DNA from: Ophelia neglecta
Taxonomy: Eukaryota
DNA length: 64,000 nucleotides
NCBI GenBank assembly: GCA_965285935.1
Contig: OZ260665.1
Span: 63,922,001 to 63,986,000 of the forward strand
Direction of reading: 5' to 3'
Position numbers and translations under genes: made by a program. The notes below the pieces were generated by a model. The model worked only from the letters and a program-made list of their open reading frames with translations. It searched no databases and had not been told where the DNA came from. Position 1 is the stretch's first letter, and each line of letters starts with the position of its first letter. Positions 1 to 46,480 of this stretch are shown in pieces.

Positions 1-1691
1 GCTGAACATCCCCTTTTCTACTTCCTGTTTATAGATTAATTGTGTTAGCGGTAAACAGAACTTTGTTATTGTCCAGGGGACATCCAGATATCTGATCGTT
101 GATCTCTGTCTTTTTAATGCTGACATCCATAGTCTGAGATTTATAAATCATGTCTCCTAGTGTTTGCCATAACTGTGTCATAATACCAAAGAAATTACAA
201 ATAACACAGAATTTAGGATTTGGCTCACAGTGTTTAATACACAGGAATTTGTAATTTTAATCAGTTGCTTCCATTAGATTCAGCATGTGGTGTTCTCTGT
301 TTACACTCTGTTAACCTTATTTTCATGCTATGCTGGGGGGAATCCTCAGAGTTTAATAGTACCTGATGTGGTATTTTGCAATTTGGACTATTGTTTTTTA
401 CCGTTGTGATAGTGCATATTTTGTTTGTACATGTACAGGTTGATTTATGATTGGTTTATCACCATAGAGGTGAATGTACACCTAATAGGGTTATACAAAC
501 AGTCATTGTACATGTACCTCCCAGTTTTCTTTTACTTCCATGTTAATTCTTAGACTGGTTTTATGGATCGGACATACATGCAACTCTGTCTTGTCTCTGA
601 CCAATGATACATATATTGAATATATATATCAGTATTTTCTTAGCACATTAAAGCAATACTGCAATGAATTTTTTCACAAAAATATAATAGTAATATTTTC
701 TATGCTATTGCCAGGTTTGAGGTTTAATTGGTTGCCATGTGTAAGCAATAGGTAAGGTTGATCAAAATGATGTTTGTATTGTTTCATTGATAGTGTATAA
801 CAGGAAATCATCCATGTACATGCTGCTCAAGTGCAGGTCTATTTTGATCATATTCGCTGCCTGAACACCTCAATTGATTCCCTTCACCAGCAGGCTGTAT
901 GTCTTGATGCTGCATATCAAATAATATAGATTTGGTTGTTTATAAGCAAACAGTGCATTAGACTGACTGCAGCATGCAGACACAGCGCCAGCTGAACCTA
1001 GCCACGACGCAGAATGCTGAGTGTGGCAGCTGGGCTCATCGGGATAGACCCCTGAACAATAGTGATTAATGACCCTGAGCATTGTAGCATTTTCTCTCAG
1101 CCAAGTCAATAGCCTTCTGTTTAGTTTTGCAATCGATACCTGGATGCTGCAAATTCCACTGCTCAATGTGTAATGTTTGATCAAAACAGGGATTCATTTC
1201 TTGTGATCTCATTGCCATGTGATATCTGTGACATGACATGACACCCCTGATCTCTAGGATTACATTGTTGGCACCCTTTAACAGTGCTAAGGTCAAATTT
1301 GGAATTTTTATGGGATGATTATGGTAATGTTCGTCTCTGCTACAATTTTGTGATGGACTTCATTCACCATTGATATTCTAGTCACATGGCTAGTGGAAGT
1401 TAGAAGAAATCAATGGAATACCAGGTGCTTTTAATTCCACTGTTGGTTTTATTTCTCCATCTAGAAGTGAAGGCTATGAAACTGTTACCCTATGCTTTGG
1501 GCTTCACTGGTCCTTCAATATCTTGTACATACACAGGATAATATCCCTACTGTGCATTTTGTTTTGACAAAGAATGAGTATTAAACTTAGGTTGAACAGA
1601 CCTAAAAAGACTGACTTGTTAAAAGTGATTTTTCATACACACAACATGTGTATGTGAATGTTCAGGTATATCCATTTGAGAGTGTAAGGAT

Positions 1692-1898
1692 ATGGATTGG
1701 GAGGTGGAGGAGTATTTTTCTGATGATGGTCAGGACAACTCTCACTATCCCACTTTGGTAAACAGGATCCCTGTATTTCCTTCAGTTATTATATCTAACT
1801 ATGCCAGTCGTCAACCCCATCGTCAGCATTCCAACTCATCGGGCACATCCAGTCGTTACAATGGCCGTCTTCTCCCAGCCTCTCCTGGGTTTTCAAAG
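1692..1898 (+). CDS. Candidate alternative first coding exon of myosin XV (69 aa, MDWEVEEY...GFSK)
   Basis: Acceptor TTCAG at 1661-1665, in-frame TGA at 1677-1679 upstream of ATG 1692, and a phase-0 donor AAG|GTACAT after 1898 that matches the phase-0 acceptor of exon 2289. Confidence 0.55.
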
Positions 1899-2288
1899 GT
1901 ACATAAACATAAATATACACCCCAGTGTACAAGGATTTTAACAAGTGTAAATGTACACCTGGGCTTTCACATCTTAGTCATTTGTTTTGATATGTGAACA
2001 TTTATTGCTTAAACTTGATTTGCTAAGTGCTCTGTGGGTACTTCTATATCATAAATATTCATTAGTTTAGAAGTTGGGGGCCTATATTATCAAGTGTGTG
2101 GCCTCTCCCCTGATAAGTGTTGTGCAGCTGCTTTAAACTGACTTGAACGGGGCAACATTATGCTGTTATATGCTCCTGTTTTATTATGGTATTGACCTCA
2201 GTCTGGTGACTTTTGAGTTAAATGATACTGCATCACATCATTTTGTATTGAACATGGCTGCTATATAGTTTTGGGTATTGTTTTGCAG

Positions 2289-5200
2289 CTTCAGCCAAGG
2301 ATGGAGGTTGCCCATCTTGAAATTCCCTCAGAGCTTGGATATATATTTAGCAAGTTAAATGGTAAGTTAATAAGTTTTGTACATAGCTTTGTGCACCTTA
2401 TGAGTAAATTCTAACAATATGAAACATGTGTAAATAAATATTAAATATTACATCAGTGACCATAACCAGTATGGGCACTTTTCCTGCTGCCTGCTGACAC
2501 ACATTGTGGAGGTACTTTTAACCATTATTTCACTTCATTTTCAATAAAACTGTGTGCTTGATGTGTGTTCACCATACTGATTAATTAATTGATATAAACT
2601 CAGTGCGGCAGCCTCTTCATAATGAGAAGAATGTGAAACAAACTGAGGGCCATGTGGAGCTGAGGAACCTGGACCTGAGACTGCCCCATGACGTCAATGC
2701 CTATGACTTCTCTAAATATGTCAGCATCTACTTCAAGGTACAGACAGCCACTTTGGTGGATAAAATATCTCTTTCTGTTGTTTGAGAGTGAGTCGGGGTA
2801 GATCCACCACATTTATCTCATAATATTAAGGGTAGGAACAAGACTTAATACCAATGCCTTCAACTTTTTTCAAATACACAATGTGTAGTGCTTTAATACT
2901 TCATAAGGGGTTAGCAAGGTGGGTGGGTACCAGCGCGCGAGTATAGAAAATAAAAACAAGAGAAAAAAACTTCTAATACATGAAAGTAAGAAAACAAAAA
3001 TTTACATATTACATAAAATAAACACACATACAGTATTAATGGAGCAGTGGAAAAAAATACATATACACTAAGGAGTTACCGAACCTTTACTGTGTTGTTA
3101 TTAGAGTATCTACTGGAATCTGCCAGTAGTTAACAGATTAACATGCACGTATATACTTCATTGCACAGTCACTCATCTGAAGTGCCCTGAAAGTGCTTTT
3201 TTTCTGTCTGAACTTCAAACCTTGGGTGGGCCCCTGATAATCTCTGACCTCAACAATGTTTCAATATTTCACCCTTGAAACATCAGTAGTTTGACTGGAT
3301 ATCTAACTGCTGAGTCCTTGACTTGTGAAAGAATGAAGTTCAAAGCAAACATGTTTCCATGTAAACTAATTAGTCTGCCACTATAAAAGAATTAGAAATA
3401 GACTCTTTTGTTGTCCTCTTTAAACCAGAGGGACATACACGTATGCTAAGTACAGCTGTAAGCCAGATGGAAATTCTAAAAGGTCATTTTTTTTAAAACC
3501 AGTTATGCTTCAATAACAGTCTGTTTTGAAAATTTTAATATATAAGCCTGGGGAATATTGTCTTCTCTCTCATGATATGAAAATTTTGTCATTACAACAA
3601 AGTGGTCAAAATGTATAATCGCCTTAAATTGCAAAGTGATTGAGCAATTTGACCAACATTGTTATGATGTTTGCTCTTATGCAATCTATAAGCATAGCGT
3701 GATATACATGTACTTGAAAGGAAAATCATGTGTAATTTGGGTACCATAGCAGCTATAAACAAATCTTTGTAACATCTTAGGAGATAAACCTGTTGAGTGT
3801 CCTGTGAACCTTTAGGATATTATAGGCTGCAGAGCTGAACTTGGCTGCCATGATTAAAGTTAAATCACCAAAATCTGTTTTATCTGGATTCATTTTAATG
3901 GCAAGAGCTTAAAGACTGATTTATGATTGTAGAGAATAAATAAATTTATTGGTGTGTGTATTGGACTCTCAATTTCCCATCAGGATTGTAGCTGGTCACT
4001 CCCAGTGGCTGGCCAGCCAATCAGCGACTGTTTTGATCAGCGTGAAGAAGAGACAATCTAAACGGTTCATTGCATCTTGAGATGAATTTGAACATTATGT
4101 TCAACTTAATGATTTATGATTAAAATGTATCACATTTTACTATATTTAAACATACAGGTACACTTGTACATGAACCTAAGTGTTACATTTTAGATAGCAT
4201 GTAGAGTACATTTGATAATGATCATACTGGGCTTTGACCTGAGATGTTAAGGTCAATCTAAATATGTCTATTTCAGGTCAACTGCTCCATATTTTTTTCT
4301 TCGTTTTCAATATGATACAATGCATTACCCTTATATGGTGAAATTAAGATAAATACATATTAAATGTACATATTTCCTTACCATAAAAGGGTCACGAGTT
4401 GCGACCTCTTCAGGAGCCACTCACATCACCGTTTCTGGACCAAAGAAATGATTCAAATGTAAAGGATGCATTGGCTATTTTCAAACTGGTAAGCAAAATT
4501 AATTGTCTGATTTTTTTAATTGTGACCTAGAAGATCCCCTGTATCCAGACCCTGGCTGATTCCCTGAGGTGAGCTCTCCTAATATGCTGATGAGCTCCTT
4601 GTCTATCATGAAAGTATGAATCAATTAATTTTCCTCTGGAAAGAGACGTTATATTTTATAATAATGATTATTGTAATTATTAATTTAATTCATTTGAACA
4701 TTTAGTATTTTTAATTCTCAGATCCTGCGGTATATGGGAGATTCTAATCTGGTTGGCCAACGAAAACAGGCCCTGGCTGACTATATTGTGTACAAGGGCG
4801 AGTCCAACGCAGACATCAGAGATGAGATTTATGTCCAGCTGGTAAACCAGACATTTGGTATCAGCAATGAAGCAGCACTCCAGAAAGGCTGGGTGCTAAT
4901 TACTAACTGTCTCAGCTGCTTTCCACCAAGTCCAAGTCTCTCCAAATATCTACTCAAGTAGGGGTCTCATTTAAATTTATTTGTATTTAGTGTATCCCGG
5001 TAGGATCCAATAATCTGTGAAAGGAAACATCTCTTGTTATTGTGTGATATGTAATAGCCAGATGATTTTTGATGATACATTGTATATGAAGTTGTTTAAG
5101 TATTGAAGAAATTATCAGTCTAGCTGGATGAGCAATTACTCATGGGTCAAATGGAGTTATTTGAGTATTATTAAGAATTCTTCCATGACGTCAAAACTCT

Positions 5201-8200
5201 TAATGAGGATATTTTTATACTTCAGTAATTTCTCTGTTCTCATGTTACACCTTGACCCTTTGATTTCATTGGAGTCCCCGATTTAATTAAAGTCCCGATA
5301 TATATTTCCAGGTATGTATCTGATCATGCCTATGACGGTTACAAGCTGTACTGTCAACACAAGTTGTTACAGTGTATGGAGATTGCCCCTGAGCTCTCCA
5401 GGTGCTATGCCCCCTGTCTATTGGAGTGGAAAGCTGCGGGCGAGAAAGCTTGTATGGCTCTGGAGGCTTACTGTGGAGATGGTAGGCGGCCAGTTAGTTT
5501 TAAAGAATGATTAGCCTGTTCGTGTTCCTTTTATACATTGCTTGGTAAAAAGAATTCCATGATTTTTAGTATTTTTGTTAATACATGCGTATCAAATGAC
5601 GGACAGGTACTTGGAGGATAGATTGTCTCTAGATCTATCAACCTTTAGTTCTGTTTGTTTCTTATTGTTATTACTTGCTTTAATGAAACTGAATATAAAT
5701 TAATTGGAATTAAGTTTTTGTCATATTTTGATATACAGGAGGCAAAAATTATGGCCATGTTGAATCATGGATGACAGCAGAGGAGTTTGCATCACAGCAC
5801 ATACAAAACAGGTAAACCAATTCCCTTGAATTTTTTTTATTATTAAATCATTTCTGTATTGTTTGAGAAGAAATTGGCCACAACATGAAGCATCACTATG
5901 AGTCAATGAGGAGACAGTCTTTGGTATCAGCTAGCTACCAGCATGGGAAAGCCATGTGTAAATGAGATTAAACCAGTGACGTAGAGCACCGAAACACTCA
6001 TTGAAAACAATGAAATATTATAGGCAAATGAAATTTACAAGCTCATACAAACAAACCATAAAATTTGTTTTTTTTCCTCTTAATTATTAAGAAATGAGAA
6101 ATTGCTGACTGAGGATATGCAACGTGTTAAAACTGAAAGCTTCAAAAATATAAGCTCTATGTGTCACTGTACAATTAGTGGTGTATGCATCAAGACGTTC
6201 ATATGGCTGTAGGCTTGTAGTTTGGAATATATACAATGCCATGGTGATGTTTATTAACTTACCAGTTGACAATACCAACAGGAACATAGAAGAAGGTCAC
6301 CATGGGTGGACTGTGGCTCTGAGAGATGAGAGTGACGTGTACGAGTGTGCAGGCCATGATTACCTCCTGGATATGATCAGCGAGATGGAGATCCCACCAT
6401 ACTTCCCATCATGCAAAGCCTACTTTCTGGTCAGCAGTGACCGCCCCAAAGAAAGCAAACGAAGGAAACTCTTCATTGACACGTGAGTATTCTCTCTCTT
6501 TTTCTCCAAATTGAATATTATAGGACTATGCATCTATTATATTTAACAAAGAGTGATGAAGAGAACAAAAACTATTGCTATAGTCTGAGATTCAAATTTG
6601 TCTGTTGCCTGTCAGTATTTCTCAATTTATTTAGTAGTAAACAAAAGGAACATGATTTATAATTTACAACAGACCTCACCATGCTGATAACCCCCGCAAA
6701 ATGGAACTACCAATAGAGGAGTTGACTAAACCCACCCCGGCCTCCCCCAGGCCTCCCCTGCAGCCCAGCTCCTTCTTTCAACATCCCAGTAGCAAGAACG
6801 GAGATGCGGATTACGTATCCAGGGAGGAATTGCTCTCAGGTAGCATCCTCAACAAAAGAGACCTCAGCAATAACCCTGACCTGTCTAAGAATAGCATACT
6901 GAACATCAGATATGTTAAGAGGCCTGCTCCTCCACACCCTCAGTCTACCATCTCCACACTGGAATCTGAGGGCCAGCCATCCCCAAGGCCTGACTCGTCT
7001 GCTCCTCCTCTAGCTGCCAACAGCAAGATGAACAAGAGGTATGTGGCACCAGGCGATATCAAAATTGACTTGCCTCACACTAGACTCAATAACCGGTACA
7101 CTATCGCACAGGATAAGTTTTTCCCCAATGGAGATCTTCCAAATGGAGATCACTTTCCAAACGGCGTTCAAAATGGCAATGTTGACTTGTCTGGAAATGG
7201 TCAGCCCAACTCGCGTTATGCAAAGAATCCTAATGTAAATCGATCTAGTGCACATTTGGAGCACTCGGCAAAGGATCAGATTCTCAGGAAGCATCGACAA
7301 CAACCAGTAGTTTCCTCAGGTCGGTCTGATGTTTCCGACTTAGATCGATGGGTAGATGACGTTTTTGACAGGGTGCTTGATGGCAATGTTGATGAGTTAA
7401 ATGAACAACGGACTCTGGAAAACAGGCTGAAAGGTGGTGGAGATAACCCCTTCCAGGTAGGTCACATTCTCTTATTATTATTATTTCAACAAGTATCATT
7501 ATTAAATTTTTTTTTAACAAGCCTCAAAATAAATGTGAAAAATTGAGAGACGGTGTAGTGTTAGTTAAAGTTATTGTGAACAAAAATGTATTGTTATGGT
7601 GAAAGCTGTCTTATATTTGTCTCCAGCAGCCTGTATATTCCACCATGATTAATACGGGCATGCCAGGGACCTCCACCTCCTTCCCTGTCACACAGCCACT
7701 GTACACCCAAACCACTAGTCTAGGAACAGGTAAGTTGGAAATTAATAATGATAATTAAACTGTAGGTTTATTTATGCGTGACTTAGTAATGCAATATTTA
7801 GGATTTACTTGTTTATAAGATAGTTATCTAATATTGCCAGTAATGCATGCACATGTTTTTAGGTGCTAAAATCAGCTGTTAGTGTCTTTATATTTGATGA
7901 TTTATTCATTTATGGGTGTATTTTCCCCTTTGGTGTGGGACTGACATGGGGTGATGTCAATCAGTCAGTAAGTATTGCCCAAGATCTGCCTTGGCTGGGT
8001 GCAGGGCTAGTGTGGGGTGAAGTCCACCAGTCAGTGAGAATCAAGGATCTCCCTTGGCTGTGTGGGGCGATGTCCACCAGTCAGCAAGGAGTCTAAAACT
8101 ACCTTGGCTGAGTATGGGATGATGTGGGGCAATGTCCACCAGTCAGCAAGGAGTGAGGAACTCCCTTGGCTGAGTGTGGGATGATGTGGGGTGATGTCCA

Positions 8201-20200: not shown

Positions 20201-23200
20201 GTTTATGTCCTTGTCTTCAGATATGAAGAAATCAAAGATGTGAGTGTGCCAAGGCCTTTCACTGTACAGATTCACTCGGTAGATGAGAAATACACAATCC
20301 TCTACTCCTACAGGGTCAGTCTCAACTCATAGCATGTAAAATGAGATCAGACTAGTGGTTTTCATTAAACATCTACATGTTATTAAAGTGTTGTTTATTG
20401 TTCACCTTCCTTAAAAGTATTGTTATAGGTTTAAAGTAATATCTTAGATCATTGTCTTTTTTTCAGGCAGAGCAACTGAGGAGTTTGATTGAAGCCTTTT
20501 GCATTGAATGTGAAATGGTAAGTTATTACTGAAGTTAGAAATTATATATAAAAGATACATAACAAAGTTCAATGTTGGTTTATATTTCAATATTAGTGTA
20601 TGAATTTGTGTGTGAATTAATGTATAATATGATTGTAATGTCAATTAAAACCTATCACAGAAGAAATAAATCTGAAAAAAGTTGGATACTTGAGATATTC
20701 ACACATTAAGTGTGATTGCCTTAGTGAAAGTGGCATCTTTTTTCCCTTATTACACCCTGCCTGCCACATTGTTCAGGAAAAAAACACAACGGATGAGAAT
20801 TGTGTAGTGTTTCCTGCTTATTACATTCAAGTGTTTTTTACTTCTTGTGTGATACCTTTCAGAATGTAAGATACGTGAGAGCTATCAAAAGATACAACAC
20901 CCACGAGCCAACTCTCTTGAGTTTTGACAAGGGGGACATTATCAAACTCACCAACAAGAACATGACCATCGACAGAGGTGGGCAGGCCCAATTTATAATA
21001 TAATTATTATCATATGATATAAAAAAAGGAAATATATGGTTGGTTTATCTGGTAATAACCTTGAACAATCTGCTTTCAGCATGTTTTACTATGAAACATT
21101 ATATAAACACTGCACTGATTTATGATTGCAGAGAATAAATAAACTTATTGGTGTATTCATTGGGTCCTGCTGCTCTTGATTATTATTTATCTGATAGTTT
21201 ATTTTTGAGATGTGATATTTTTGTTTTGTTTCCAGGATGGCTGTATGGGTCAGTGCACGGTAGAACTGGACTTTTCCCAGAGGATTACATCAAACCTGTA
21301 CCCCTACATGAACTTACAGCCTTGCATTTACTGGTGAGATATAGAGTATTTGCTTGATAAAGATAGAATTGCATATCTATATTTTTTTCAGTATTATTGC
21401 AGTTTATTGCCATGGTGTGACATATTACTACATAAATATATTACTGCATCATAATAGTTTAGTGTGTATACATGTTAAATTTCCTGTACTCCATACTTCC
21501 TTGTATATAATTGTAAACATCTAAATGCTTGAAGTATTAAAAAAAGTCAAGAGAATGGAATTTTTACAAATAAGAAGGAAGTATGATAATTTCTAATGGA
21601 GTGTTTTCTTACTGCCATTATTATAGTCCAACAGCCGTGGTAATTTGATTGCTTAAGGATAATTTTAATGCATGAAGATTTTATATCTTTTAATAAGGCT
21701 AAAAAAACAGTTTTAACTCCATATAGTTACTGGGTGTAGATTATTAACTGTGCCAGGAAAATTTAGAGTTGTATATTAGCATCAGAAACATGTGTGGCAT
21801 GAAGTATCAGTAACACTGTCGTGTGTATTTGATTGGTTTGGCTCATTATTGATTGTTGGAAGTCAATCTATATTGCTTTAAAGTAATCTGGAATATGTTA
21901 AGAAAATCTGATTACAATAATCAGTAGTCTGATTACAGAAGTTATGTATAATCTTTTAATATAAACATTACTAGTACTTGCATGTTAATTCAGTTCAAGT
22001 TTGTTTGGAAATTCACTATTTTGCTGCCGAAATTACCAGATAATTGGTTTCACCAATAAAACTGTTTGGTATGTGTGCTTAATCTATTGTGATTACATGT
22101 GGAGGCATCTAATTCACTGTACAAATAACACAATGGGGAAAAATCAATTTGTGCAAACATACCAAGCAAGTTGTCTCATTGTTATATAGAACAGGTCCAG
22201 CGTGTTAAAGTCAACGACTTAAACATTATTTGTTCCCATAGCTATATTTTAATAAACAGGGATTTACATGTGGAGCAACTTTGGCCATACAACTTAATCT
22301 TAATGGAATTGACTTGATTACTAAGTCATGTGAATGAGAAAGTATCTACAGGCCTCAAGATAGTAAGTCATGGACACGAGATAGCATAGCGGGGCCACAA
22401 GATAGTAAGTAATGGGAATGAGATAGCATCTCAGGGCCAAGGGATAGTAAGTCATGGGAACAAGGTAGTATCTAGGGGCCACAAGATAGTAAGTCATGCG
22501 AATGAGATAGCATCCCAGGGCCAAGGGAAAGTAAGTCATGGGAACAAGGTAGTATCTAGGGGCCACAAGATAGTGAGTCGTGGGAATGAGATAGCATCTC
22601 GGGGCCACGAGATAGTAAGTTGTGGGGATGAGATCGGGCCACGAGATGGTAAGCCATGGAACATGTAGTATTTCGTTAAAATAAGATAGCATCTGAAGGC
22701 CACAAGACAGTAAGTTATGGGAATAAGATAGCATCTCAGGGCCACGAGATATTAAGTTGTGTGCAAGAGATATCAGGGAACGAGTTAAAAGAAAGAAATT
22801 CTGACTTCCCTTAGGGCTTAGGCCAGGGGATTATTTTAGGCCCAACCAATTAAAATCATCACAATACATGTATAACATTTCAAGTTCACAAGAATAGCAA
22901 GAATCATATTTTGACATGAAGCATTGCATGTTATTTGCATGGTTTACTGGCAATATAATGATACTGTAAACTTAAGCTGAATGAAAACAACATTATATGT
23001 TGTTTTGGTAATCTGAAAGAAAGTTAGTCTCCATTTGAATCTCTTTCTCATAAATGTTACATAGGAAATAAAATGTCAAGCATAGAGAACATTGTATATA
23101 ATAGATGCATCGCATACATAGCAGCATGTGCATGTACATGTATATTGAACCTTGCCATTTCTCACAATTGAGGTTCTAAATTAGTCATGTGTGGCCTTTT

Positions 23201-29200: not shown

Positions 29201-32200
29201 TTAACAAGAAGTCAGTATATTTATGGTATGGCAAATTTACAAAAAAATGTATAGTAATAATGTTTGTTGGATTGCACAGTCCCTGCGTTAATGATAACAT
29301 AACTTGGTACAATAAGGATACTATTAGATTTTGCTTTTTTTTCATGAGCAGGCCAGATTTATGAGGCACTTTAAAGGCATAATAGTGGGTTATTAAAAGG
29401 ACAATAAAGCTGTACACTTTAAAGGCAGCACAATTACAATTATACTCCAAAACCTAAAAATAGATACAAAATATTAACCTTTAAAAATTCTATAATAAGC
29501 TATTTTTGGGTTGCCAATGAAAGTTTCACTTTATCTGTATTGAATACCAAATCATTTTTTTTAGGATCCAATTCAGAACTCCTTGTTGAAATTTGAATCA
29601 CCTAAGATGAACAAACAAGCAGCAGAATGCTTTCTGTGTAAGTAAAGCATTATATACATTTAGTGATAATAAGATTGTTATTACAGACAATTTTCATGTT
29701 ATTAATTAAGGATTTGTTAACTGCATTCTCTGCCACCTTGTATACATGTATTAATGGTCACTTTGATATCTTTGCCCATGCAGCCATAATGCGATACATG
29801 GGAGATTACCCCTTGGACAAAGGTCAGAAGCCCATTGACAGTGTTTACTCCATACTGATGTCCTGCCACAACAACCCCGACCTGGCTGACGAGGTGTACT
29901 GCCAGCTCACCAAACAAACTACTAACAACAGGAGCACCAAACCGTAAGTTCTACTAAACTACAAACTATTAACACTCTGAGTAGACAAAACCAAAAGTAA
30001 GAAAAAACAGACAAGACATTTACTATGTAGTGCCCCAAACTGTTTCTAATGATAGAATGAAACATGAAAGCAACACTGACAGGAGGACTTGATTGCCAAA
30101 GTGTAACACAAATACAAGTTTGGATGGTACCTTTTATCTCAGTCCCCAGTGTTTGTTAGAGCAGCACCAAACAGTCTTCATGTCTTTAAAGAAATAAAAA
30201 TGAAACCAGTTGAATACAATTTTCTATTGGACGTCTCATCCAGAATCCTTGACAATTTGCTGTCTGACTGCCAAAAAGTATGAACTACCAGCAGTCGTAG
30301 CAACAGAGTAAAAGAAATGTCATGTTTGACTGGGCTTAGATAATACCTATAATATCCAAAGTGAATGGGTAGCTACAACTCTTCATAAGTAAAATTTAAT
30401 ATCCAAAGCTAAATTGGTAGCTTCAACTTGGCTTAGATAAAACCTAATTTCCAAATTGAATGGGTGGCTCAAAACTATCAGTCTGAGCATGACTTGCTTA
30501 GAATAAATTGTTTTAAATAATTTATACTATTACAATTGAAATAATGTTTTGGATTAAAGCCGTGTGCAGCATATGAAATAGTTCAGTTTTCCAACAAACA
30601 TAATGCTTGGTATTTACATATTAGTATAGGACTTGGAGCACTTGATTTTCCCTATTATGTTTTGTTCATTGCCTTTCCAGAGAGAGTGAAGTCCAGGGCT
30701 GGAGGCTCCTCTGTATCCTCAGCTCCTATTTTTCATCTTCCAAGGCCCTGCAGCCGTATCTCCTGAAATACCTAGAAACTGCTTACAACAGTGACAGACC
30801 TCACCATGGTAAAGTTCTATGTTTGCAGATTGGTTGTTTAGATAAATACCTTAACCTGCAACTAAGACCTCTAAATTCTAAGGAGTAGGTAAAATATGAT
30901 GAAAGTATCACACATTAATAAAGTTTATTAGACCAAGTCCTCAGCATGCACATGATGTCACCAAATAATGATATTTTATGCATTATACATTAAAACAAGT
31001 TCTGTCTAGGTACAAGATGGATCCTGAAATAGGAATTTTGGCCTGGGCATATCTTAATGCTGCAACAGCTTTTTGATGTACCAAGTCTTTAAAAATTTCA
31101 TGCAGGTGGTCTATGAATATCTGATTTTAGCATTTAATGACATGTTAATCATTCCTTTTTTTTCCAAAATTAATTGAACCATGGCTTCCCAGGCCTGAAT
31201 GGCTTCTTGTAGTCAGACGGCATGTACACAAATGTGTATCAAATTACAACTGACAAACCGGACTTAATAGATTGCACATATAATTGATATTTTCAGCTGC
31301 TGCCCAAACCAGTTTGATTAATTTACGACATACATTCAGATATGGTGGCCGAAAAAATGTGCCAAGCAGAATAGAGCTGGAGGCTCTTACCGTAAGTCTT
31401 CATTTTGTAAATTTGAATCAGTCCCAAGAGTCAGAGATCAACATATAATAACAGGGTACAGGAATTCTTTTTAAAATAAGGGCTCTTCCATTTGAAAAGG
31501 TGTGTGTGTGGGGGGTGGGGGTGGAACTGGCTTTTTTTTGCACCCCCCCCCCCACCAACAGATTTTTTTTTCTTTGGACCCCCCCGACCAAGGTAAAAGG
31601 TTCATTCGTGACCCCCCCCCCCATGTATAGTAATGAAATTTCAAAATATCCCCCCCTCCCCCCAAAGCAAAGAACTTATATTAAAGCATCTTCCAATTCA
31701 GGCTTTAAAATTGAATCTGTGGTCTGCTTTCACAATGCACCTGATCAGGCTGATGAGCTAACCGACTTGCTTCCTACCTCTATAAGTAATTTTATTTATT
31801 AATAGTGCCAGGTTTTGAAAAAACAAGTAAAAAATAAACACCATGGTATAGATGGGTATTAATGCCAATCCAAACAGAAATTAAAACAAAAGGTTGGGCT
31901 ATTTCAGCAGGTCAGGTGCTGCTAAGTTGAGTTTAATAGACAGTAACCTGGTAACTGACAGGCAAACCCTAAACCCAAACATAACCCTTATACATGCAAA
32001 ACAACTGATTTATCTTTAAAGAGCACCCAATACAGCAATATTCAGCAATGAACGTTTTCTCTAAGTTGGTCTGGCCGGTTTAGATACGTCCCTTTAATGT
32101 AATACCTGGTCCCGATCTCTAAATCGGCTCTCACAACATCGTCAGATCATCAGTCTATCAGTCTACCTATCTATAGCCAGTCAGTCAGCAGTCAGTCAGT

Positions 32201-35200
32201 CAGTCAGATCAATGTACTTGTGTACCACGCGCACTTGAATCTAGCCTAGACAGCGTGGTTCCAGTTACCCGACCAACACTAAAAAAATTCCCCGACCCTA
32301 TGGTTTTTACAGCTTTATTCAGAATAAAATGTTGGCCTGCGACCCCCGGTCCTGGCCTGACAAACGCATTTTTTTGTGTTCGGTTTCTTTCTTGTTCTGC
32401 TCTGCCAGAAATAAACTGGTCGTAAAGTTTTCTTCTTTCTCCCGCTATTGTGCCAAGAGCTACATGGCACTTACTTCATCCTGCATCCTCCCCGCACTGT
32501 CGGTATTTGTATGCGGGTACTCCCTGCACAAGCTGGCAGGGGTGTGTGCAAAGAGCTCAACAGCTGGTCGTCGGGAAGAGCAAGGTTCTTTAAATTTCAG
32601 CTCTCCCCCCACCCAACATATTAAATTTAACTATTCACCCCCCACTCTACAGATATTTTTTTGTGGTCCAGGGGTGTAGGAATAGAAAAACAAAATGCTT
32701 CCGTTCCACCCCCCACCCCCACCCCCCGCCCTGATCTTTTCAAATGGATGAGCCCTAATGACATTGTTAAAAATTTAATGAAGAAAAAACTTGTACATGT
32801 TTTCAAGATCTGTGTGATTGTGTTTCAGAGAGGTCGTAACACTAAGAGACAGATGTGTATACTACCTGGGGGTACTCCCATGATGCTCAACATGAGAAGC
32901 AGCAGTGTGAGTATAAACAGTAACCTACAACTGAAGACTACGGCCTTAATGGAAAGAGGTCATCTGATTTTATAAGGATGAAGTCAAGTCAAATTAATTA
33001 AAGAAGAATGGCTGTACAAAATTCCTGTTGCTAAGTGGGACAGATTACAGTATGGCACAGGCTAAATATTCTGTTGTGTAAATAAAAGACAGGTTTTTTT
33101 TTAGTGCTCCAGAAAAACATGTCTACAAAAAGACTATGAAGGGTATTTGATTTGATCTGGTTTGTTATACAGGTTGTTCAAGATGCCATAGAACAAGTGT
33201 GCAGCAAGCTCGGTGTCCAGTCGGCGTCTGAGATGGAAGAGTTCACTATTTTCTATGTGATTGAAACAGGTTGGTTGTGTTTATTCATCTTATTAGGTAT
33301 ATATTTATTTGTTCAGTGGCTTTGATTTCCAAAAGAAAAAAACACCTTTATATTAATATGGGCTTAGCACATTTTTTTATGAATTCATAAATGTGCATTT
33401 GTGACATTCTGGTTAGTATTAAGGTCGATAGGTCTAACCAGATATTTGTCCCTTCATTGTGTATATAATTATTGTCTATTGTCTTATTTGCAGAGAACCG
33501 CTATTGCCCACTACGTAAAGAGGAGTATGTGTTTGACATTACAACTGAGCTGACCAATCAGAAGAAGAACTACTACCTCCTGTTTCAGAGAACCAGCTGG
33601 GTGTTCCCACTTCACCTGAACAGAGATGACCGTTATGTCGATGTCATGTTCAACCAGGTCAGTCTGACATTCTCCACAATGTCTTTGAAAAAAATGTCAG
33701 GATAAAAGGGAAAAACACAGGTTTTAAAAAACACATCGAAACCATAAGGCAGAAAGCACCGGATGTGAACATGTCAAACTATAAGGCAAGTAACACTGGT
33801 TGTGAAAATGTCAAAAACCAAATGACTGAAAACACCGGCTGTGAACTAGTCAAATCAAAAGGAAGAAAGTTTTGGGTTTGAACTTGTCAAAACAAAAAGG
33901 CGGAAAACACTGGTTGAGAACTTGCAAAAGGCGAACAACACTGGGCTTGAACATGTAAAACAAAAATTCAGGAAATGCTGGATTTGAACATGTCAAAACA
34001 AAAAGGCATAACATGGAAGGCAACACTTCCAAGCAAAAAAGGCAGAGTGGATTATACCATGACAAAATTCAAGGCAAATCACAAAAAACACTAATGTGAA
34101 CATGTCAAACAAAAAGCCAAAACATGAGATCAACACAAAATGGCAAAGCACAGGATGCTATTATGACAAAAATAAAACAGTATACATTAAGATAACAAAA
34201 CTAAAAGGCAACACACTGTGTTAACACTTCTAAAATAAAAGGCAAAAAAAACACTGGGTTAACACTTCCAAAATAAAAAGCAGACATGTTTGCAACCCTT
34301 TTTAATTGATGGGGCGTGCATTTCTAAACACCTTGTTTAATATGAAATGAATTTAGGTACATCAATGCCATTTGATAAAATGTGTTGAAATGAAAGCATG
34401 TATGTGTATGACATTTCCGGTTTGTATTCCAGTGTATACCAGACTACTTGGATGGTTACCTGCTGGCAGTTGTATCAAACACACTGCCAGATCACATGAA
34501 GGTAACAATAGAAGTTCTATACTACTAAGACTGATAACCTGTCATAAAAGCACAGATATATCAGAATGCGCTAAGGACACAATTGTCAAGCATTTTTCTT
34601 TTAATTCTATTTAATCAGTTACTAACTATGAAACTCATTATTATTTTGTTGTATAACCTATTTGTTTTGCCTCAGGATGAGATAGCCTATCTAGCAGCAC
34701 TCCAGATTAGATCTTCAGAAAAGCCAGGTGTCATTCAAAAACAGTAGGTTTTAACATATAACTGTTGATAAGAAAATTGTATTGATAAACATTACAAATA
34801 TGCATTACTGAAAAAGAACGCTGTGGTTTATGTGTATCAAAGGCCTGAACAGAGGGTCCATCAGTGTTACTAATTTCCAGTAGAAATATTTAGCCTTGGA
34901 AGAAAAACTGAAGATAAAAATGTATGTTGAAATTAAGACAATTCAAACTGGATGTTAACTGCTTTTCAGAAAAGACGTCCAGTTCTTTATCCCCAGTAAT
35001 GTACAGAACTTGTCTGATATGAAGCCACAGCAGTGGAACAATAAAATCCACCAGTTACTAACAGAAATGCCCCACATGAAACCCACAGAATGCCAAAAAA
35101 AATTCCTTGGTAAGTATTAAGAGTGTTAGGTGTATATCATCAGCTACAATGGTCCTAAAAAATATGTTTAAACTGTAACCACATATTATTATTTCTTCCA

Positions 35201-36807
35201 TTACAGAGAAACTTCAGCGATGGCCACTATTTGGGTCAACTTTCTTTAATATAAGGGTGAGTCTTCTAGTTCAGTTGTATGGTGTGAGTTACTAATACTT
35301 GTGAAGAAAATAGTTCCTGCTAGTTGACCATTTAATGTTATTTCTAGATTTGTGAACCTGGTATGTTTTATGTTTTTAGGAAGTAAATGATCCTAAAGTG
35401 AAAGGTGACACCATGCTGGCCATCAACAGAGAGGGCCTCATGTTCTTAGACGCAAGAACACATGTAGGTCCACCAGTTCTGCTTTTATTTATATTTCTGC
35501 CTAAATTTTGAAGGTATTAGACATGGTGGAGATTGGAGTCCACAATCCTTGTAGTACTACCACCTAGATCAATAATGTGGATACTGCCTGTGCCATGTCT
35601 ACATCAGCATATGTTTTTACTAGCTGTGTTATATATGTCTCCAACAATATATGATTTTTTAAGTACATGTATTGCGTGAAATTTTCTTTTTGCTAATGCC
35701 CATATGCTCTGCCTGGTAAAATATTGTTGGGTACAGTCTCAAATAGTCAATGGTTTTCAAGCTTTGGTCTCTTTGATAATGAAAAGCCCTGGAGTTGTAA
35801 AAACCTTATTCCTGTATTAAATGTGTCTTTCAGTCGACCTTGGTGTACCACCGTTTCCAGGAAGTTCTTTCTTCACGCCGTGGTAATGCTGTAGATGGGA
35901 GCAGTCAGTTCTTGGAGATCAAATTAGGTGATCTCTACCAACAGAAAGTGCTACGACTAGTCACTGAGCAGGTAACTGTCAGACAACCAAACGGACTCAA
36001 AAGAAAGATTAGTCATATTTCAAGTTGGGTCCTGAAGAACAAAAATGTGTTAGGAACTCTTAATGATGTCATCCTCATTTACTCTGCAATAAATGTGATG
36101 GAAATAGTATGACATTTTACCTCAACAAAGAAAGTTGTTGACACAGTTTTACTCCCTTGGCCCTCAGTGTGTTGACAATTTGGTCGATTACTTAACTCGT
36201 TGTTTAAAGCAATGTTTAAGCCCCAGAACCGGAAGCAGCCAATTGATTGATTATGTTTAGTCACAGAATAGCTAATGATAATGGTGATAGTACACTCAAG
36301 TTTTGGAGTGCTAAACTGAGACCCTGAATAGGTAACTTTCAGAAACACAATATAAATCCATAACAAGTGTCACATGGGGGGGGGGGGGGAGGGCAGACCT
36401 ATGGCACTTTTTTTTACCATGCTCTCCAGCCTTCAAGGGGAGATGAGGGCGATGGAATTTGTTAGCCTTTAACATTATACTACCAATTTATTGTAAAAAG
36501 TCTAGTTTGTGCTATGAAATGTGGGGCTTGGGGGGGGGGGGGGTTCAATTATTTTATTCTTGTGTCTTCCACATATTAAGAGAATAATGAGTAATTATAA
36601 GCCAGTTAGGTATATATTTCATCTGCTGAATCATCAGCCTGTAGCCCCAGAATTATAGCTAAAGTGTTGATTATCTTATTTATTACAGTCCATACTGTCA
36701 AGAACTTTTGAATAAAGCACCTTTTCTTCCTGCAGGGGGCAGACATTGCTACTTTGATAGGACAGTACATCAAGATACACAACACATTGGCCAGTGATGA
36801 CCGATAG
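2289..36807 (+). CDS. MYO15: Unconventional myosin XV (MYO15-like), tail region; motor/IQ exons not in window
   Basis: 38 phase-consistent GT-AG exons (~2097 aa): 2289-2361, 2604-2737, 4390-4488, 4722-4957, 5312-5481, 5739-5811, 6282-6482, 6673-7456, 7627-7729, 13696-14063, 14219-15292, 16225-16516, 17499-17638, 18224-18359, 18578-18696, 19729-19844, 20221-20314, 20467-20517, 20863-20977, 21236-21333, 24974-25114, 26585-26676, 27989-28101, 28588-28643, 29565-29637, 29784-29943, 30681-30808, 31297-31391, 32829-32906, 33173-33269, 33494-33657, 34433-34501, 34676-34743, 34970-35109, 35207-35256, 35380-35463, 35834-35971, 36736-36807 (TAG). Motifs: VAHLEIPSEL; MyTH4-1 (ILRYMGD..IRDEIYVQLVNQT..KGWVLITNCLSCFPPS..KYVSDHAYDGY); Gln/Pro-rich linker; VRKELFTPSE; WPFYFSRMFPV; SH3 (YVRAIKRY..LSFDKGDII..GWLYGSVHGRTGLFPEDYI); YSMLEFA; MyTH4-2 (IMRYMGD..DEVYCQLTKQTTNN..YGGRKNVPS); FERM (WPLFGSTFF). 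This order matches class XV myosin tails. Confidence 0.92.
7930..9285 (+). repeat. G-rich minisatellite, ~62-bp unit, ~22 copies
   Basis: Unit approx. CCCTTGGCTGGGTGTGGGATGATGTGGGGCGATGTCCACCAGTCAGTGAGAAGTCAGGAACT, degenerate at both edges. Confidence 0.95.
9413..9705 (-). mobile_element. tRNA-derived SINE (Nin-domain-like), 5'-truncated, with TSD
   Basis: Reverse-complement homolog of 11167-11494 with a (ACCA)n tail. Flanked by a ~12-bp direct repeat CTC(T/C)GTCTATGG at 9401-9412 and 9706-9717. Confidence 0.85.
11167..11494 (+). mobile_element. tRNA-derived SINE (Nin-domain-like), near full length
   Basis: Pol III A-box-like TGGCCGAGTG..TAAGGC and B-box GGTTCAAATC. The core GGACTGGTCAACCCGGTGTCAGTATAACGTGACTGGGTGG resembles, from memory, the Nin domain of molluscan SINEs. 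Tail AAACAACCAACCAA. Confidence 0.85.
11570..11596 (+). CDS. Candidate 27-nt cassette microexon of myosin XV ((A)NLWDLLAP)
   Basis: U-rich acceptor TTATTTTAG, donor CAG|GTAAAT. It is symmetric phase 1, matching flanking exons 7729 and 13696, and contains no stop. Confidence 0.5.
15359..16150 (+). mobile_element. Non-autonomous Helentron/HINE (DINE-1/pearl-like) element
   Basis: Sub-terminal inverted repeats TCCGCGAAATGC (15364) / GCATTCGCGGA (16098); (GCC)n microsatellite; two ~151-bp internal tandem core repeats; 3' hairpin GCTGTCG-N6-CGACAGC (16119-16138); CTAGTT end. Confidence 0.8.
22320..22790 (+). repeat. Degenerate tandem repeat, ~40-bp unit (two ~20-bp subunits), ~11 copies
   Basis: Recurrent AGATAGTAAGTCATGGGAAYGAGATAGCATCTCRGGGCCAC. 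It generates the spurious repetitive ORFs 22321-22734 and 22536-22745. Confidence 0.9.
23845..24528 (+). CDS. Candidate internal alternative first (or large cassette) exon of myosin XV, 228 aa, basic/low complexity
   Basis: Long ORF in an otherwise stop-rich intron. In-frame TGA at 23818-23820 precedes ATG 23845. A strong phase-0 donor ACT|GTAAGT matches the phase-0 acceptor of exon 24974. Confidence 0.65.
26682..26850 (+). repeat. Dispersed repeat, second copy at ~29105-29260; TTAAAGG start (possible Kolobok-like MITE remnant)
   Basis: Both copies read CTTAAAGGTCTCT..GGAAGCAA..TTACAAATAT..AGAAGTCAGTAT..TGGCAAATTTACA. Confidence 0.6.
27718..27933 (+). repeat. Short tandem repeat (GAGTCACCTGGGTT)n, 14-bp unit, ~15 copies
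   Basis: Directly visible array ending ~55 nt upstream of exon 27989. Confidence 0.95.
31480..32755. mobile_element. Non-autonomous PIF/Harbinger-like DNA transposon
   Basis: TIRs GGGCTCTTCCATTTGAAAAG / CTTTTCAAATGGATGAGCCC (1 mismatch), flanked by TAA on both sides. The interior is C/G-tract and CpG-rich with no transposase ORF. Confidence 0.7.
33715..34285 (+). repeat. Highly degenerate A-rich tandem repeat (~30-37-bp unit)
   Basis: Recurrent AAACACTGG..TGAACATGTCAAAAC..AAAGGCA. Confidence 0.75.
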
Positions 36808-44800: not shown

Positions 44801-46065
44801 AACAAGTCTACTCTTTATTCATGAGTTTGGTGGCTTTATAAATTATCACTGACTTTAATAATAAATCAGTGTACAGCATAAACAAATATACTAAAACCAA
44901 GTGTTTAAATTAAAATAAAATTTGTTAGGACCTTTTGACAATGTAATTTAATGTTTAAATTCATATCCTTAGACAAGTCTTAGATAAAAAAGAAGAGCAC
45001 AGTTGGCATAGAGGAATATATACAAACAATAGCCTGAGGACAATACCTTGCCAACAGATGGGAATCCTATCAAGGCCACTCTGGCATCACCTGATTTCAT
45101 AACATCAAAACCTTCTCCCTGTTTACGATTACAAATGTTATTATCACAGAACATTAAGGTACTAACCAGGTAACTAACAAACATGTAATCATGAATTTTT
45201 ATTCTTATGCTACATATTTTACCAATCAATACCCGGTGTATTTAAAATGCGCAACCACCCCAAACCCACTGGATATTAACCCAAACCGAGCTGAAACAGC
45301 AAGGTACTAGGGGGAAATGCTTCAGGATTGTTGCTAAAGTTGTTTTTGAATAACTTGCTGAGCAATCGGGCCATTTAGTAGCAAAAAAGCGAGCTAACTT
45401 GTTCACCCGTTCTCCGGTGTTAACGTTATATCGCGGCCATGACAACTGCACATCACACGCCCTCTGGTAGCGACTGCCCCGGATGTGCAGGTGTCATAGC
45501 CATGATCAAACGTAAACACCGGAGAACAAGTTAGCTCATTTTTTTACTACTAAATGGCCCGATTGCTCAGCAAGTTATTAAAAAACAACTGTAGCACCAA
45601 TCCTGATGCATTTCGCCCTAATACCTTGCCGTTTCAGCTCGGTTTGGGTTAATATCCAGTGGGTTTTGGATGGTTGCGAATTTTAAATACACCCATCAAT
45701 ACCTTTGCTCCAGATTTTGTTGTGGGTTCGAGAAGTTGTGCTCTGTATCTCGCCAATTTTGCCTTAAGTAAACCCAAGTGATGTTCAGTAGCTGAAAACA
45801 AAACAACATGCATGATTACTATAACATTTACATGTGTGCGTGTGTGTGTGTGGGGGGGGGGGTTGCCTAGGGTTAGTGGGTGGGGGAGAAATGGGTTATT
45901 TATTTATTTCTTCTGGTTCTGTTTAAATAATCAACAAGCACACTACGGAGACCCTTTTATCCATACCAGAATGAAAGGTTCCTTTATAATACTGTACATA
46001 CCCTTGTTTTTTTGGGTTTTGGCTATTTCCCTCTCGACATCCGCGATCCTATCTAAAATACCCAT
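41861..46065 (-). CDS. DRG2: Developmentally regulated GTP-binding protein 2 (complete, 13 exons, 364 aa)
   Basis: Exons 46002-46065, 45703-45791, 45047-45118, 44702-44791, 44327-44478, 44004-44076, 43774-43864, 43551-43648, 43186-43262, 42821-42909, 42534-42592, 42080-42133, 41861-41947 total 1095 nt. Sequence: [35 protein letters not shown]; G1 GFPSVGKS; [11 protein letters not shown]; G3 [25 protein letters not shown]; G4 NKID; TGS C-terminus ...DDVIQIVKK*. The MGIL start, the AQGKG motif and the length favour DRG2 over DRG1. Confidence 0.96.
43649..43773 (-). other. U12-type (minor spliceosome) GT-AG intron in DRG2
   Basis: 5' splice site GTATCCTT; branch site TTCCTTAAC (43667-43659) ending 10 nt before the 3' splice junction; no polypyrimidine tract. 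Confidence 0.92.
45234..45694. mobile_element. Foldback MITE with ~190-bp inverted arms and 9-bp TSD (Mutator/MULE-like) in DRG2 intron 2
   Basis: Arms GGTGTATTTAAAAT..CCCACTGGATATTAACCCAAACCGAGCTGAAAC.. and their reverse complement. TSD ATCAATACC at 45225-45233 and 45695-45703. Confidence 0.9.
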
Positions 46066-46480
46066 GACTGATGGTCGTTCGTTTTCCTATGCGCCTTCTT
46101 GGAGTCTTAAAGCGGATAAACTGCCTTGGTACTTATCTACATGCCGCTGACAGAAGAAGAAAATGATCAGATTCAGGTTTGTCCACACGAAACACACGTC
46201 GGACTTAGCCGGAAGTTAATAATCATGAAGACATCGAAGTTAAGGTAAGAGCAAGGGTGATGGTTATCAACGTGAGTAACAGATTGCAGTTGCGGTTCAA
46301 TACTTCCGGTTTTGGATGTTACGCAAAACCGGGGACCAGGCTAGGTTAGGTGTTTTGATTGCTATTATATATTCTCCTGGTAGAACAAGCTCCTAATGAT
46401 AATTTATCTTTAAGCTTGCATAGACGAAGGTAACTTCATCACAATATTTTTGATTTAACTATTTATCCACGTGTGATTAA
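46066..46480. promoter_or_regulatory. Bidirectional DRG2/COX11 promoter
   Basis: Head-to-head housekeeping genes with local CpG enrichment. Opposed ETS/GABP-type motifs CCGGAAGT (46209-46216) and ACTTCCGG (46302-46309), and CACGTG at 46468. The COX11 ATG exon has an upstream acceptor (TTCAG at 47020-47024), implying a non-coding first exon with a donor at ~46244 or ~46429. Confidence 0.7.

What the first reader, a model, noticed from the sequence alone, without database searches (positions are those of the whole stretch)
930..2361. Candidate motor-less (headless) myosin XV isoform starting just before the tail
Seen: exon 1666-1898 has an acceptor, an in-frame TGA (1677), then ATG 1692 and a 69-aa ORF. 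It ends in a phase-0 donor that reads straight into the first tail exon (LQPRMEVAHLEIP). Because of the stop, it cannot be an internal coding exon of a full-length myosin when spliced at 1666. Upstream there is a TATA-like TATAAGCA (941-948), a GC-richer stretch, and a possible donor near 1323. Known: a headless isoform from an internal promoter is established for MYO10. Inference: this locus encodes a ~2170-aa MyTH4-FERM-SH3-MyTH4-FERM scaffold without a motor, either as an isoform or as the whole gene.
Basis: partly seen in the sequence, partly recalled or inferred. Interest (0 to 1): 0.75.

Follow-up and report, generated by a model that had tools for sequence, protein, structure and literature searches.

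The report
Possible motor-less myosin XV start exon
A 69-codon reading frame in the intron between the neck and the tail of a complete myosin XV gene looks like a start exon for a motor-less form of the protein, but it is not conserved and no RNA data exist to show that it is used.

Summary

The locus is not a motor-less gene. An intact motor (P-loop, switch motifs), IQ motifs and a charged neck exon lie 1.6-13.4 kb upstream on the same strand. They are collinear with full-length myosin XV proteins.

The neck exon ends in phase 0 and exon 2289 starts in phase 0. In 31 of 31 homologues with upstream sequence, the neck runs straight into the LEIP motif with no match to this frame. The 69-codon frame is therefore an optional, lineage-specific element inside a 3.9-kb intron.

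Its codon usage, GC/CpG content, Kozak-type ATG just after a stop, and good donor set it apart from the other 300 open frames examined. No candidate acceptor looks good. The proposed TATA box, upstream exon and donor are at chance level.

My estimates:
- Alternative first (start) exon of a motor-less isoform: about 0.4.
- Chance frame: about 0.3.
- In-frame cassette: about 0.18.

No RNA run exists for this genome. Motor-less class XV models already exist in databases (amphioxus, seahorse XVB, Owenia), so this would be a new member of a known kind.

The parts
1692..1898 (+). Candidate exon D: ATG plus 69 codons (starts MDWEVEEY), serine-rich and probably disordered
   Evidence: frame; codon score, GC/CpG, composite 1 of 301; no Pfam family over cut-off
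1677..1679 (+). In-frame TGA, 15 nt before the ATG
1664..1665 (+). With it, all three frames are closed before 1898. Its pyrimidine tract is weak (7 of 16).
1681..1688 (+). Two further AGs (1681-82, 1687-88) that would give in-frame internal exons of 72 or 70 codons. Their -3 bases are G and A. An A>C variant at 1687 in one DNA contig removes the second AG.
1899..1904 (+). Donor GTACAT after AAG, phase 0. GC drops from 0.55 to 0.33 here.
   Evidence: 97.6th percentile of 248 GTs
2289..2361 (+). Exon E, the first conserved tail exon (LEIPSEL motif). Phase 0 in, phase 1 out. Contains ATG 2301 in context A at -3, G at +4.
   Evidence: (15 homologues match at E<=0.01)
2604..2738 (+). Exon F, the conserved segment before the first MyTH4 domain
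4722..4958 (+). First MyTH4 exon
   Evidence: PF00784, E 4.7e-16
941..948 (+). TATAAGCA; chance-level motif
961..1060 (+). GC-richer stretch (58% GC), single copy, no RNA family or protein family, CpG o/e at background
20842..21315 (+). SH3 exons of the tail
29783..30828 (+). Second MyTH4 domain exons
33161..35971 (+). C-terminal exons collinear with the FERM end of homologues (no Pfam hit on the two single exons tested)

Best explanation
**Shown.** The window begins inside a complete class XV myosin gene. The exons lie in this order on the + strand:
- Motor exons at window positions -13386 to -4940.
- Two IQ motifs, in the exon at -5111..-4936.
- A third IQ-like exon, at -3450..-3366.
- A charged neck exon, at -1772..-1587.
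- The MyTH4-SH3-MyTH4-FERM tail, from 2289 onward.

The canonical full-length message joins the neck exon (phase 0) directly to exon 2289 (phase 0), as in all homologues examined.

**Inferred.** The frame 1692-1898 sits in that 3.9-kb intron. It is most likely a lineage-specific alternative first exon. On this reading:
- Translation would start at ATG 1692.
- The donor at 1899 would join to 2289.

The product would be a tail-only scaffold (69 new residues followed by the whole tail) that has no motor and no calmodulin-binding neck. Such a protein could bind tail cargo without moving on actin, as headless Myo10 does.
For: **Gene context:**
- The window is C8:63922001-63986000.
- Myosin_head matches lie on the same contig and strand at 63909169-63914917.
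- There are 7 collinear motor HSPs with a myosin of the same genome.
- A 3071-aa protein named Unconventional myosin-XV aligns collinearly from -13386 to 35463, with 0 minus-strand HSPs.
- GESGAGKT, NDNSSRFGK and DIFGFE are intact.
- IQ motif E 5.1e-10; MyTH4 twice; SH3.

**Optional nature of the frame:**
- The neck donor AGG|GTTAGT and the acceptor of exon 2289 are both phase 0.
- 31 of the 40 homologues that carry the LEIP-type motif have at least 60 residues upstream of it. None of the 31 matches the frame at E<=10.

**Exon-like quality:**
- Codon score is in the top 3-5% of controls.
- GC plus CpG is in the top 3.5%.
- The donor is at the 97.6th percentile.
- GC steps down exactly at 1899.

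**Start-exon pattern:**
- The in-frame stop lies 15 nt before an ATG with G at -3 and G at +4.
- It is the only 1 of 301 open frames with this combination.
- There is no ATG in 1666-1691, and only short upstream frames at 1646-1658.
- None of four candidate acceptors resembles this gene's acceptors: PWM scores are -1.1 to 1.0 against a median of 6.1, and the -3 base is C or T in 16 of 17.

**Precedent:** deposited amphioxus MYO15A models include one of 1852 aa with a unique 13-residue start joined 12 residues before the same motif.
Against: - No RNA run holds the stretch. The 3 holders are DNA contigs of one sample and show no splice joints.
- No relative of the 73-aa peptide was found anywhere:
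  - the word search found none, though it was limited to 40-128 aa candidates;
  - 0 of the 150 best homologues of the gene match;
  - a metagenome scan found none;
  - the own genome has no second copy.
- There is no promoter signature. CpG o/e is 0.0-0.36 across 500-2400, while island-like peaks elsewhere in the locus reach 1.0-1.35. TATA-like motifs are at chance density.
- The statistics are post hoc and partly dependent on one another (GC drives both the codon score and CpG).
- The acceptor PWM rests on 17 sites, some inferred automatically, and 5 of 17 true sites score 0.2 or lower in leave-one-out.
- The closest full-length relative in the library is only about 62% identical even in the MyTH4 exon, so the lack of conservation has little power either way.
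Confidence: 0.4

Rival explanations
1. The frame is not an exon. It is a chance open frame in the 3.9-kb intron between neck and tail, and the only messages join the neck exon directly to 2289.
For: - Open frames of this length are common here: 147 of 60 codons or more on the + strand of the 94 kb examined.
- No conservation in any search.
- No RNA.
- No good acceptor and no promoter signature.
- All homologues with upstream sequence lack it (31 of 31).
Against: - Chance would have to supply all of these together: coding-like codon usage (top 3-5%), GC/CpG (top 3.5%), a Kozak-type first ATG right after the stop, a donor at the 97.6th percentile in the right phase, and a GC step at that donor.
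- 0 of the other 300 open frames show even the ATG-plus-codon part.
Confidence: 0.3
2. The frame is an in-frame cassette exon of the full-length myosin. It is spliced at AG 1681-82 or 1687-88 (72 or 70 codons, phase 0 to phase 0) and adds a disordered linker between neck and tail.
For: - Both alternative starts keep the frame, and the flanking exons are both phase 0.
- Two homologues (P0068, P0118) carry unrelated low-complexity inserts at this position.
- One accepted acceptor of this gene (neck exon C) is AAG.
Against: - The -3 base is G at 1683 (0 of 17 acceptors of this gene) and A at 1689 (1 of 17).
- A CAG|G lies 17-23 nt upstream, and using it would close every frame.
- One DNA contig of the same sample carries A>C at 1687, which removes the second AG.
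- The Kozak-type ATG right after the stop would be a coincidence: only 4 of 301 open frames have a first ATG within 5 codons together with R at -3 and G at +4.
Confidence: 0.18
3. The frame is a 'poison' exon. It is included from full-length pre-mRNA at the 1666 acceptor, where it introduces a stop (at 1759 in the incoming frame). The message is then degraded or yields a tail-less motor-neck protein.
For: - CAG|G at 1664-66 has the best -3/+1 bases of the four candidates.
- With a phase-0 upstream exon, the frame from 1666 stops at 1759.
- The donor is good.
Against: - This does not explain coding-like codon usage in the ATG frame.
- The 1666 acceptor has the weakest pyrimidine tract of the four, 7 of 16.
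- No RNA.
Confidence: 0.07
4. The whole gene is motor-less.
For: None found. The best library hit (Owenia fusiformis CAH1793641.1, 2397 aa) is a model that starts 5 residues before the LEIP motif, which shows that such models do get deposited.
Against: Intact motor, IQ and neck exons lie on the same strand 1.6-13.4 kb upstream. They are collinear with full-length homologues and phase-compatible with exon 2289.
Confidence: 0.01

Closest known systems
Headless Myo10 (brain isoform from an internal start)
   Same: A MyTH4-FERM myosin gene that also yields a motor-less protein sharing the whole tail. The abstract states that the headless isoform is still expressed when the full-length form is deleted (PMC6345916; search listing and abstract start seen). 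Sousa et al. 2006 was seen only as an entry in a reference list.
   Different: It is a different myosin class, in vertebrates, and shown by experiment. Here nothing is shown at the RNA or protein level, and the candidate adds 69 new residues.
Branchiostoma lanceolatum MYO15A deposited isoforms (CAH1274627.1 1852 aa; CAH1274626.1 1840 aa; CAH1274625.1 1864 aa)
   Same: Class XV, motor-less models that begin 12-25 residues before the same LEIP-type motif. One has a unique 13-residue start, which suggests an alternative first exon spliced at the equivalent intron.
   Different: These are annotation models whose transcript support I could not inspect. Two of them start at an internal Met of the upstream exon and may be 5'-truncated. 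Their unique start is 13 residues, not 69, and is unrelated in sequence. The RefSeq isoforms X1-X4 of the same gene all carry the motor.
Hippocampus comes unconventional myosin-XVB isoforms X1-X3, and Owenia fusiformis CAH1793641.1
   Same: Database proteins of class XV type that start at a Met exactly five residues before the LEIP motif. This gene has a Met at the same place (ATG 2301).
   Different: They need no extra exon. They may simply be gene-prediction starts: other fish models (for example P0020, 3105 aa) carry the same Met internally after a motor.
Drosophila Myo15 short isoform (PE/RE)
   Same: A class XV gene annotated with a short isoform. That isoform shares the far C-terminus and is not hit by a guide RNA or an antibody aimed at the large isoforms (passages of PMC12237259).
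   Different: That isoform appears to start much further downstream, since it lacks the region around aa 2000-2100.
Human MYO15B
   Same: A class XV paralogue long represented by a shorter tail-only UniProt entry. GENCODE later annotated a CDS 1,534 aa longer (passage of PMC4895710). Its protein status is still called uncertain (passage of PMC13249394).
   Different: It is a separate vertebrate gene, not an isoform, and there is no link to this exon.

Membership tests
Class XV myosin (MYO15 / Myo15 / Sisyphus type) | Myosin motor domain with intact nucleotide-binding motifs | tested here: met
   PF00063 matches on the same strand 7-13 kb upstream of the window. GESGAGKT, NDNSSRFGK and DIFGFE are present. 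HSPs cover residues 47-753 of a 3071-aa myosin XV.
Class XV myosin (MYO15 / Myo15 / Sisyphus type) | IQ neck after the motor | tested here: met
   PF00612, E 5.1e-10, 2 stretches in L034:4889-5062. The third IQ-like exon gave no Pfam hit and was read by eye only.
Class XV myosin (MYO15 / Myo15 / Sisyphus type) | Tail of MyTH4, SH3, MyTH4, FERM in this order | tested here: met
   MyTH4 at 4698-4958 and at 29783-30828; SH3 at 20842-21315. FERM is supported only by collinear alignment to the C-terminal part of homologues; the two single exons tested gave no Pfam family.
Class XV myosin (MYO15 / Myo15 / Sisyphus type) | Best relatives are proteins named myosin XV | tested here: met
   Names given by sources for 7 of the 10 clusters looked up: Unconventional myosin-XV (Lottia, Microctonus), MYO15A / myosin-XV-like (Branchiostoma), myosin-XVB (Hippocampus), and unnamed or hypothetical (Owenia, Scortum, Argonauta). 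The other three clusters carry no informative name: two ENA clusters have none and one JGI/IMG entry is called 'hypothetical protein'.
Headless (motor-less) isoform from an internal start, Myo10 type | Transcripts that begin downstream of the motor exons | not testable with these tools
   No RNA run holds the stretch. The three holders are DNA contigs.
Headless (motor-less) isoform from an internal start, Myo10 type | A unique 5' exon with its own start codon, joined in frame to the common tail exons | tested here: inconclusive
   Sequence is compatible: stop, Kozak-type ATG, 69 codons, phase-0 donor, phase-0 acceptor at 2289. It is above chance by composition. The junction itself is unobserved.
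Headless (motor-less) isoform from an internal start, Myo10 type | A promoter in the intron | tested here: not met
   No CpG-island-like signal: o/e is 0.0-0.36 at 500-2400 against peaks of 1.0-1.35 elsewhere. TATA-like motifs are at chance density. A CpG-poor, tissue-specific promoter cannot be excluded.
Headless (motor-less) isoform from an internal start, Myo10 type | Conservation of the unique exon in relatives | tested here: not met
   0 of 150 homologues, 0 of 31 upstream segments, none in metagenome contigs. Power is low because no close relative is in the libraries.

The most novel reading that the evidence does not exclude
**The reading.** Class XV myosins of bilaterians would share an ancient internal start at the neck-tail boundary. 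An intron just before the LEIP motif would host alternative first exons, and/or a conserved Met five residues before the motif would start a tail-only scaffold.

**What fits it:**
- This gene has that Met: ATG 2301, with A at -3 and G at +4.
- 15 of the 40 homologues that carry the motif have the same Met.
- Six database models from an annelid and from fishes begin exactly at it.
- An amphioxus model has its own first exon at the same boundary.

On this reading, the 69-codon frame would be this lineage's version of a widespread, undescribed headless myosin XV.
Probability: 0.12. Interest if true: 0.6.

Novelty: new member of a known kind. Interest (0 to 1): 0.3.

Why it matters
Motor-less isoforms of MyTH4-FERM myosins can act as cargo-binding scaffolds or as competitors of the motorised form. 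This is established only for Myo10.

A tail-only myosin XV would change how knock-outs, antibodies and guide RNAs aimed at the motor are read, and would suggest a motor-independent role for the tail.

As it stands, the finding is an untested prediction in one unnamed invertebrate genome. Its main practical value is as a correction: the gene is a normal full-length myosin XV. It also defines a specific junction (1898->2289) to look for once RNA data exist.

Tried and rejected
- **Bacterial-type promoter/terminator scan.** Irrelevant for an animal gene; 9 sites found against 9.3 expected.
- **Rfam on 1-2400.** One match far below its gathering score (20.3 against 94.2 bits). The GC-rich stretch is therefore no known RNA.
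- **Pfam on the two minus-strand frames 873-1193 and 1069-1359 and on 962-1066.** Nothing over cut-off.
- **Repeat check of 860-1665 in the own genome.** Single copy, so not a transposon by this test.
- **Word search with the 73-aa peptide.** None found. Only 40-128 aa candidates were eligible, so this says little.
- **Two metagenome scans, with the frame and with the MyTH4 exon.** No relatives.
- **Acceptor PWM from 17 junctions.** It is noisy (leave-one-out scores from -9.8 to 11.7), and some junctions were inferred automatically. I rely more on the plain -3 base and pyrimidine counts.
- **Variant pattern in DNA contigs.** Too few differences near the frame to test selection; 57 further differences were not shown.
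- **Wrong-frame slip for neck exon C.** Searches used it in the wrong frame (L035:1226-1414). Those two results say nothing about that exon. The correct frame is L035:1228-1413, as read.
- **Literature.** I found no paper describing a class XV isoform that starts just before the first MyTH4 domain among the 15 of 106 and 10 of 126 papers listed. The rest were not viewed. No supplementary files were asked for.


Full report
**Observation**

- TTCAG ends at 1665.
- TGA at 1677 is in frame with ATG 1692.
- 69 codons run to 1898.
- AAG|GTACAT follows.
- Exon 2289 starts after TTTTGCAG in phase 0 and reads LQPRMEVAHLEIP.

From 1666, all three frames close before 1898 (stop codons at 1759, 1685 and 1677). 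TATAAGCA is at 941-948, ATG|GTAATG is at 1323/1324, and 961-1060 is 58% GC.

**Where the window sits**

The window is C8:63922001-63986000, + strand, of a 762-Mb genome. A whole-genome scan with the myosin head family found four matches on the same contig and strand at 63909169-63914917, which is 7-13 kb before the window.

I fetched 30 kb upstream.
- A myosin frame from elsewhere in this genome gave 7 collinear motor HSPs from -13353 to -4989 in window coordinates.
- A 3071-aa wasp protein that UniRef names Unconventional myosin-XV aligns collinearly from residue 47 at -13386 to residue 2995 at 35463, with no minus-strand HSP.
- The P-loop, switch I and switch II motifs are intact.
- The last motor exon carries two IQ motifs (E 5.1e-10).
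- The tail has MyTH4 twice and SH3.

The locus is therefore a normal full-length class XV myosin.

**Exon phases around the finding**

Read from the DNA:
- The motor/IQ exon ends CAG|GTTTGT in phase 2.
- An IQ-like exon (-3450..-3366) starts in phase 2 and ends AAG|GTATGT in phase 0.
- A charged exon of 62 codons (-1772..-1587) ends AGG|GTTAGT in phase 0.

Exon 2289 starts in phase 0, so the neck joins the tail directly and in frame across a 3.9-kb intron. That is also what relatives show. Among the 150 best library hits to the first MyTH4 exon (549 at E<=0.001), 40 carry the LEIP-type motif and 31 of these have at least 60 residues before it. In all those I read, the IQ/charged region runs straight into the motif. 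None of the 31 upstream segments matches the 73-aa peptide at E<=10. Two homologues have unrelated low-complexity inserts at that position. The frame at 1692-1898 is therefore optional and lineage-specific, if it is used at all.

**Is it an exon?**

A codon log-odds table was trained on 2292 codons under homologue HSPs against intron triplets.
- The frame scores 0.098 per codon. Three large disordered exons of this gene that were not in the training set score 0.06-0.147.
- Stop-free 69-codon control segments reach the frame's score in 5% of 60 (+ strand) and 2.8% of 71 (- strand) cases. The controls include other genes of the window, so this is conservative.
- GC of at least 46.9% together with at least 5 CpG occurs in 3.5% of 571 intronic segments.
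- GC falls from 0.55 to 0.33 exactly at the donor.
- The donor scores 6.7, at the 97.6th percentile of 248 GTs in the intron and within the range of this gene's donors.

Of 301 open frames of 60 codons or more in the 94 kb examined:
- 34 have their first ATG within 5 codons of the frame's start.
- 4 of these also have R at -3 and G at +4.
- Only this frame adds the codon score.

The thresholds are post hoc and the measures are not independent. Together they still make a pure chance frame the less likely reading.

**How would it be used?**

None of the four candidate acceptors looks like this gene's acceptors.
- In 17 accepted acceptors, the -3 base is C in 14, T in 2 and A in 1.
- Candidate 1666 has C at -3 but only 7 of 16 pyrimidines. 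That is the minimum of 18 accepted sites and below the mean of 8.3 for all 200 AGs in the intron. With it, every frame closes.
- Candidates 1681 and 1683 have G at -3.
- Candidate 1689 has A at -3.
- PWM scores are -1.1 to 1.0, against a leave-one-out median of 6.1 for true sites and 6.8 for exon 2289.

A DNA contig of the same sample carries A>C at 1687, which removes the AG that would serve 1689.

The overall pattern is a good donor, no convincing acceptor, a stop followed by a Kozak-type ATG, and coding-like codons from there on. This is the pattern of a first exon.

- TATA-like motifs occur 1.5 per kb on this strand.
- The proposed non-coding exon 970-1323 holds 12 ATGs against 8.5 expected.
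- CpG o/e across 500-2400 is 0.0-0.36, while island-like peaks of 1.0-1.35 stand at -29400..-28100, -11800..-10700, 15100-16300 and 45100-46600.

The absence of a CpG-rich signature counts against a broadly active promoter. It does not exclude a CpG-poor, tissue-specific one.

**RNA and reads**

The run search found three holders with 0.81-0.98 of the sampled words of a mostly intronic 6-kb stretch. All come from one sample and none is on record as RNA. Laid on 6 kb around the finding, they cover introns evenly at about 10-30x and show no splice-like joints. They confirm the assembly, including the TGA and the frame, but say nothing about expression.

**Conservation**

- The 73-aa peptide has no second copy in the genome.
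- It has no Pfam family over cut-off.
- The length-limited word search found no hit.
- It has no match in the 150 best homologues; the best E is 0.28, at a non-corresponding place.
- It has no relative in metagenome contigs.

The closest full-length relative, from the annelid Owenia fusiformis, is only about 62% identical in the MyTH4 exon. A young exon would therefore not be visible anyway. I searched the exons one by one. The joined, spliced model was not built or searched, and the stated length of about 2170 aa was not checked.

**Comparison with what is known**

- Headless Myo10 is established (PMC6345916; search listing and abstract start seen).
- For class XV I found only annotation-level precedents.
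  - Deposited amphioxus MYO15A models of 1840, 1852 and 1864 aa begin 12-25 residues before the same motif, and one has a unique 13-residue start.
  - Three seahorse myosin-XVB isoforms and the Owenia model begin at a Met five residues before the motif.
  - Drosophila Myo15 has a short isoform that shares only the C-terminal end (passages of PMC12237259).
- Human MYO15B was long represented by a shorter entry and was later extended by 1,534 aa (passage of PMC4895710).
- This gene also has a Met five residues before LEIP (ATG 2301, with A at -3 and G at +4). 15 of the 40 homologues that carry the motif share it.

**Verdict**

- The sequence observation is right.
- The claim that the stop rules out an internal exon holds only for the 1666 acceptor.
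- The whole-gene reading is wrong.
- The isoform reading is the best fit to the frame's own features but is unproven.

My estimates are: alternative start exon of a motor-less isoform 0.4; chance frame 0.3; in-frame cassette 0.18; poison exon 0.07. If true, it would be a new member of a known kind (headless MyTH4-FERM myosin isoforms), of modest interest until RNA data exist.

Noticed in passing
L034:8760-8830 (window -1241..-1170) and L034:6551-6634 (window -3450..-3366); L035:1033-1109 and 2254-2330: A partial duplicate of the IQ-like exon, with about 90 nt of its downstream intron, lies in the intron after the charged neck exon. It keeps a CAG|G acceptor in the same phase and an AAG|GTACAT donor, so it could be a mutually exclusive or vestigial neck exon. 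A perfect 77-nt direct repeat, 1221 nt apart, belongs to the same duplication.
   Followed up: partly
window 2301-2303 (exon 2289-2361): There is a Met five residues before the LEIP motif, in context A at -3 and G at +4. 15 of the 40 homologues that carry the motif have a Met there, and six database models (Owenia, seahorse XVB and others) begin exactly at it. This could be a shared internal start or only a habit of gene predictors.
   Followed up: partly
window 15100-16300; upstream -11800..-10700 and -29400..-28100 (L032-L034): CpG-island-like peaks (o/e 1.0-1.35) stand in a locus whose median is 0.23. One lies inside the motor region and one inside the tail, so they are candidate internal promoters or regulatory islands.
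   Followed up: no
window 8061-9284: A 62-nt minisatellite of 19.8 copies at 89% matches, GC-rich, lies in an intron of the tail.
   Followed up: no
L035:1-600 (window -2999..-2400): A high-copy repeat: summed contig depth is 400-2400 against about 25 beside it, with many loose ends and internal joints in the DNA contigs.
   Followed up: no
window 1687 and 1654: One DNA contig of the same sample reads A>C at 1687 and G>A at 1654, which look like heterozygous sites just upstream of the ATG. No difference was listed inside 1692-1898, but 57 differences were not shown.
   Followed up: partly
G000:C8:42860759-42862801 (L002): A complete Myosin_head domain (997 bits, positions 1-679) lies in a single open frame reported as 1908 aa. 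It is an intron-less myosin gene on the same chromosome.
   Followed up: no
window 13617-14090: A Q/A-rich repetitive coding stretch in the tail. The Owenia homologue has a similar Q/A repeat.
   Followed up: no
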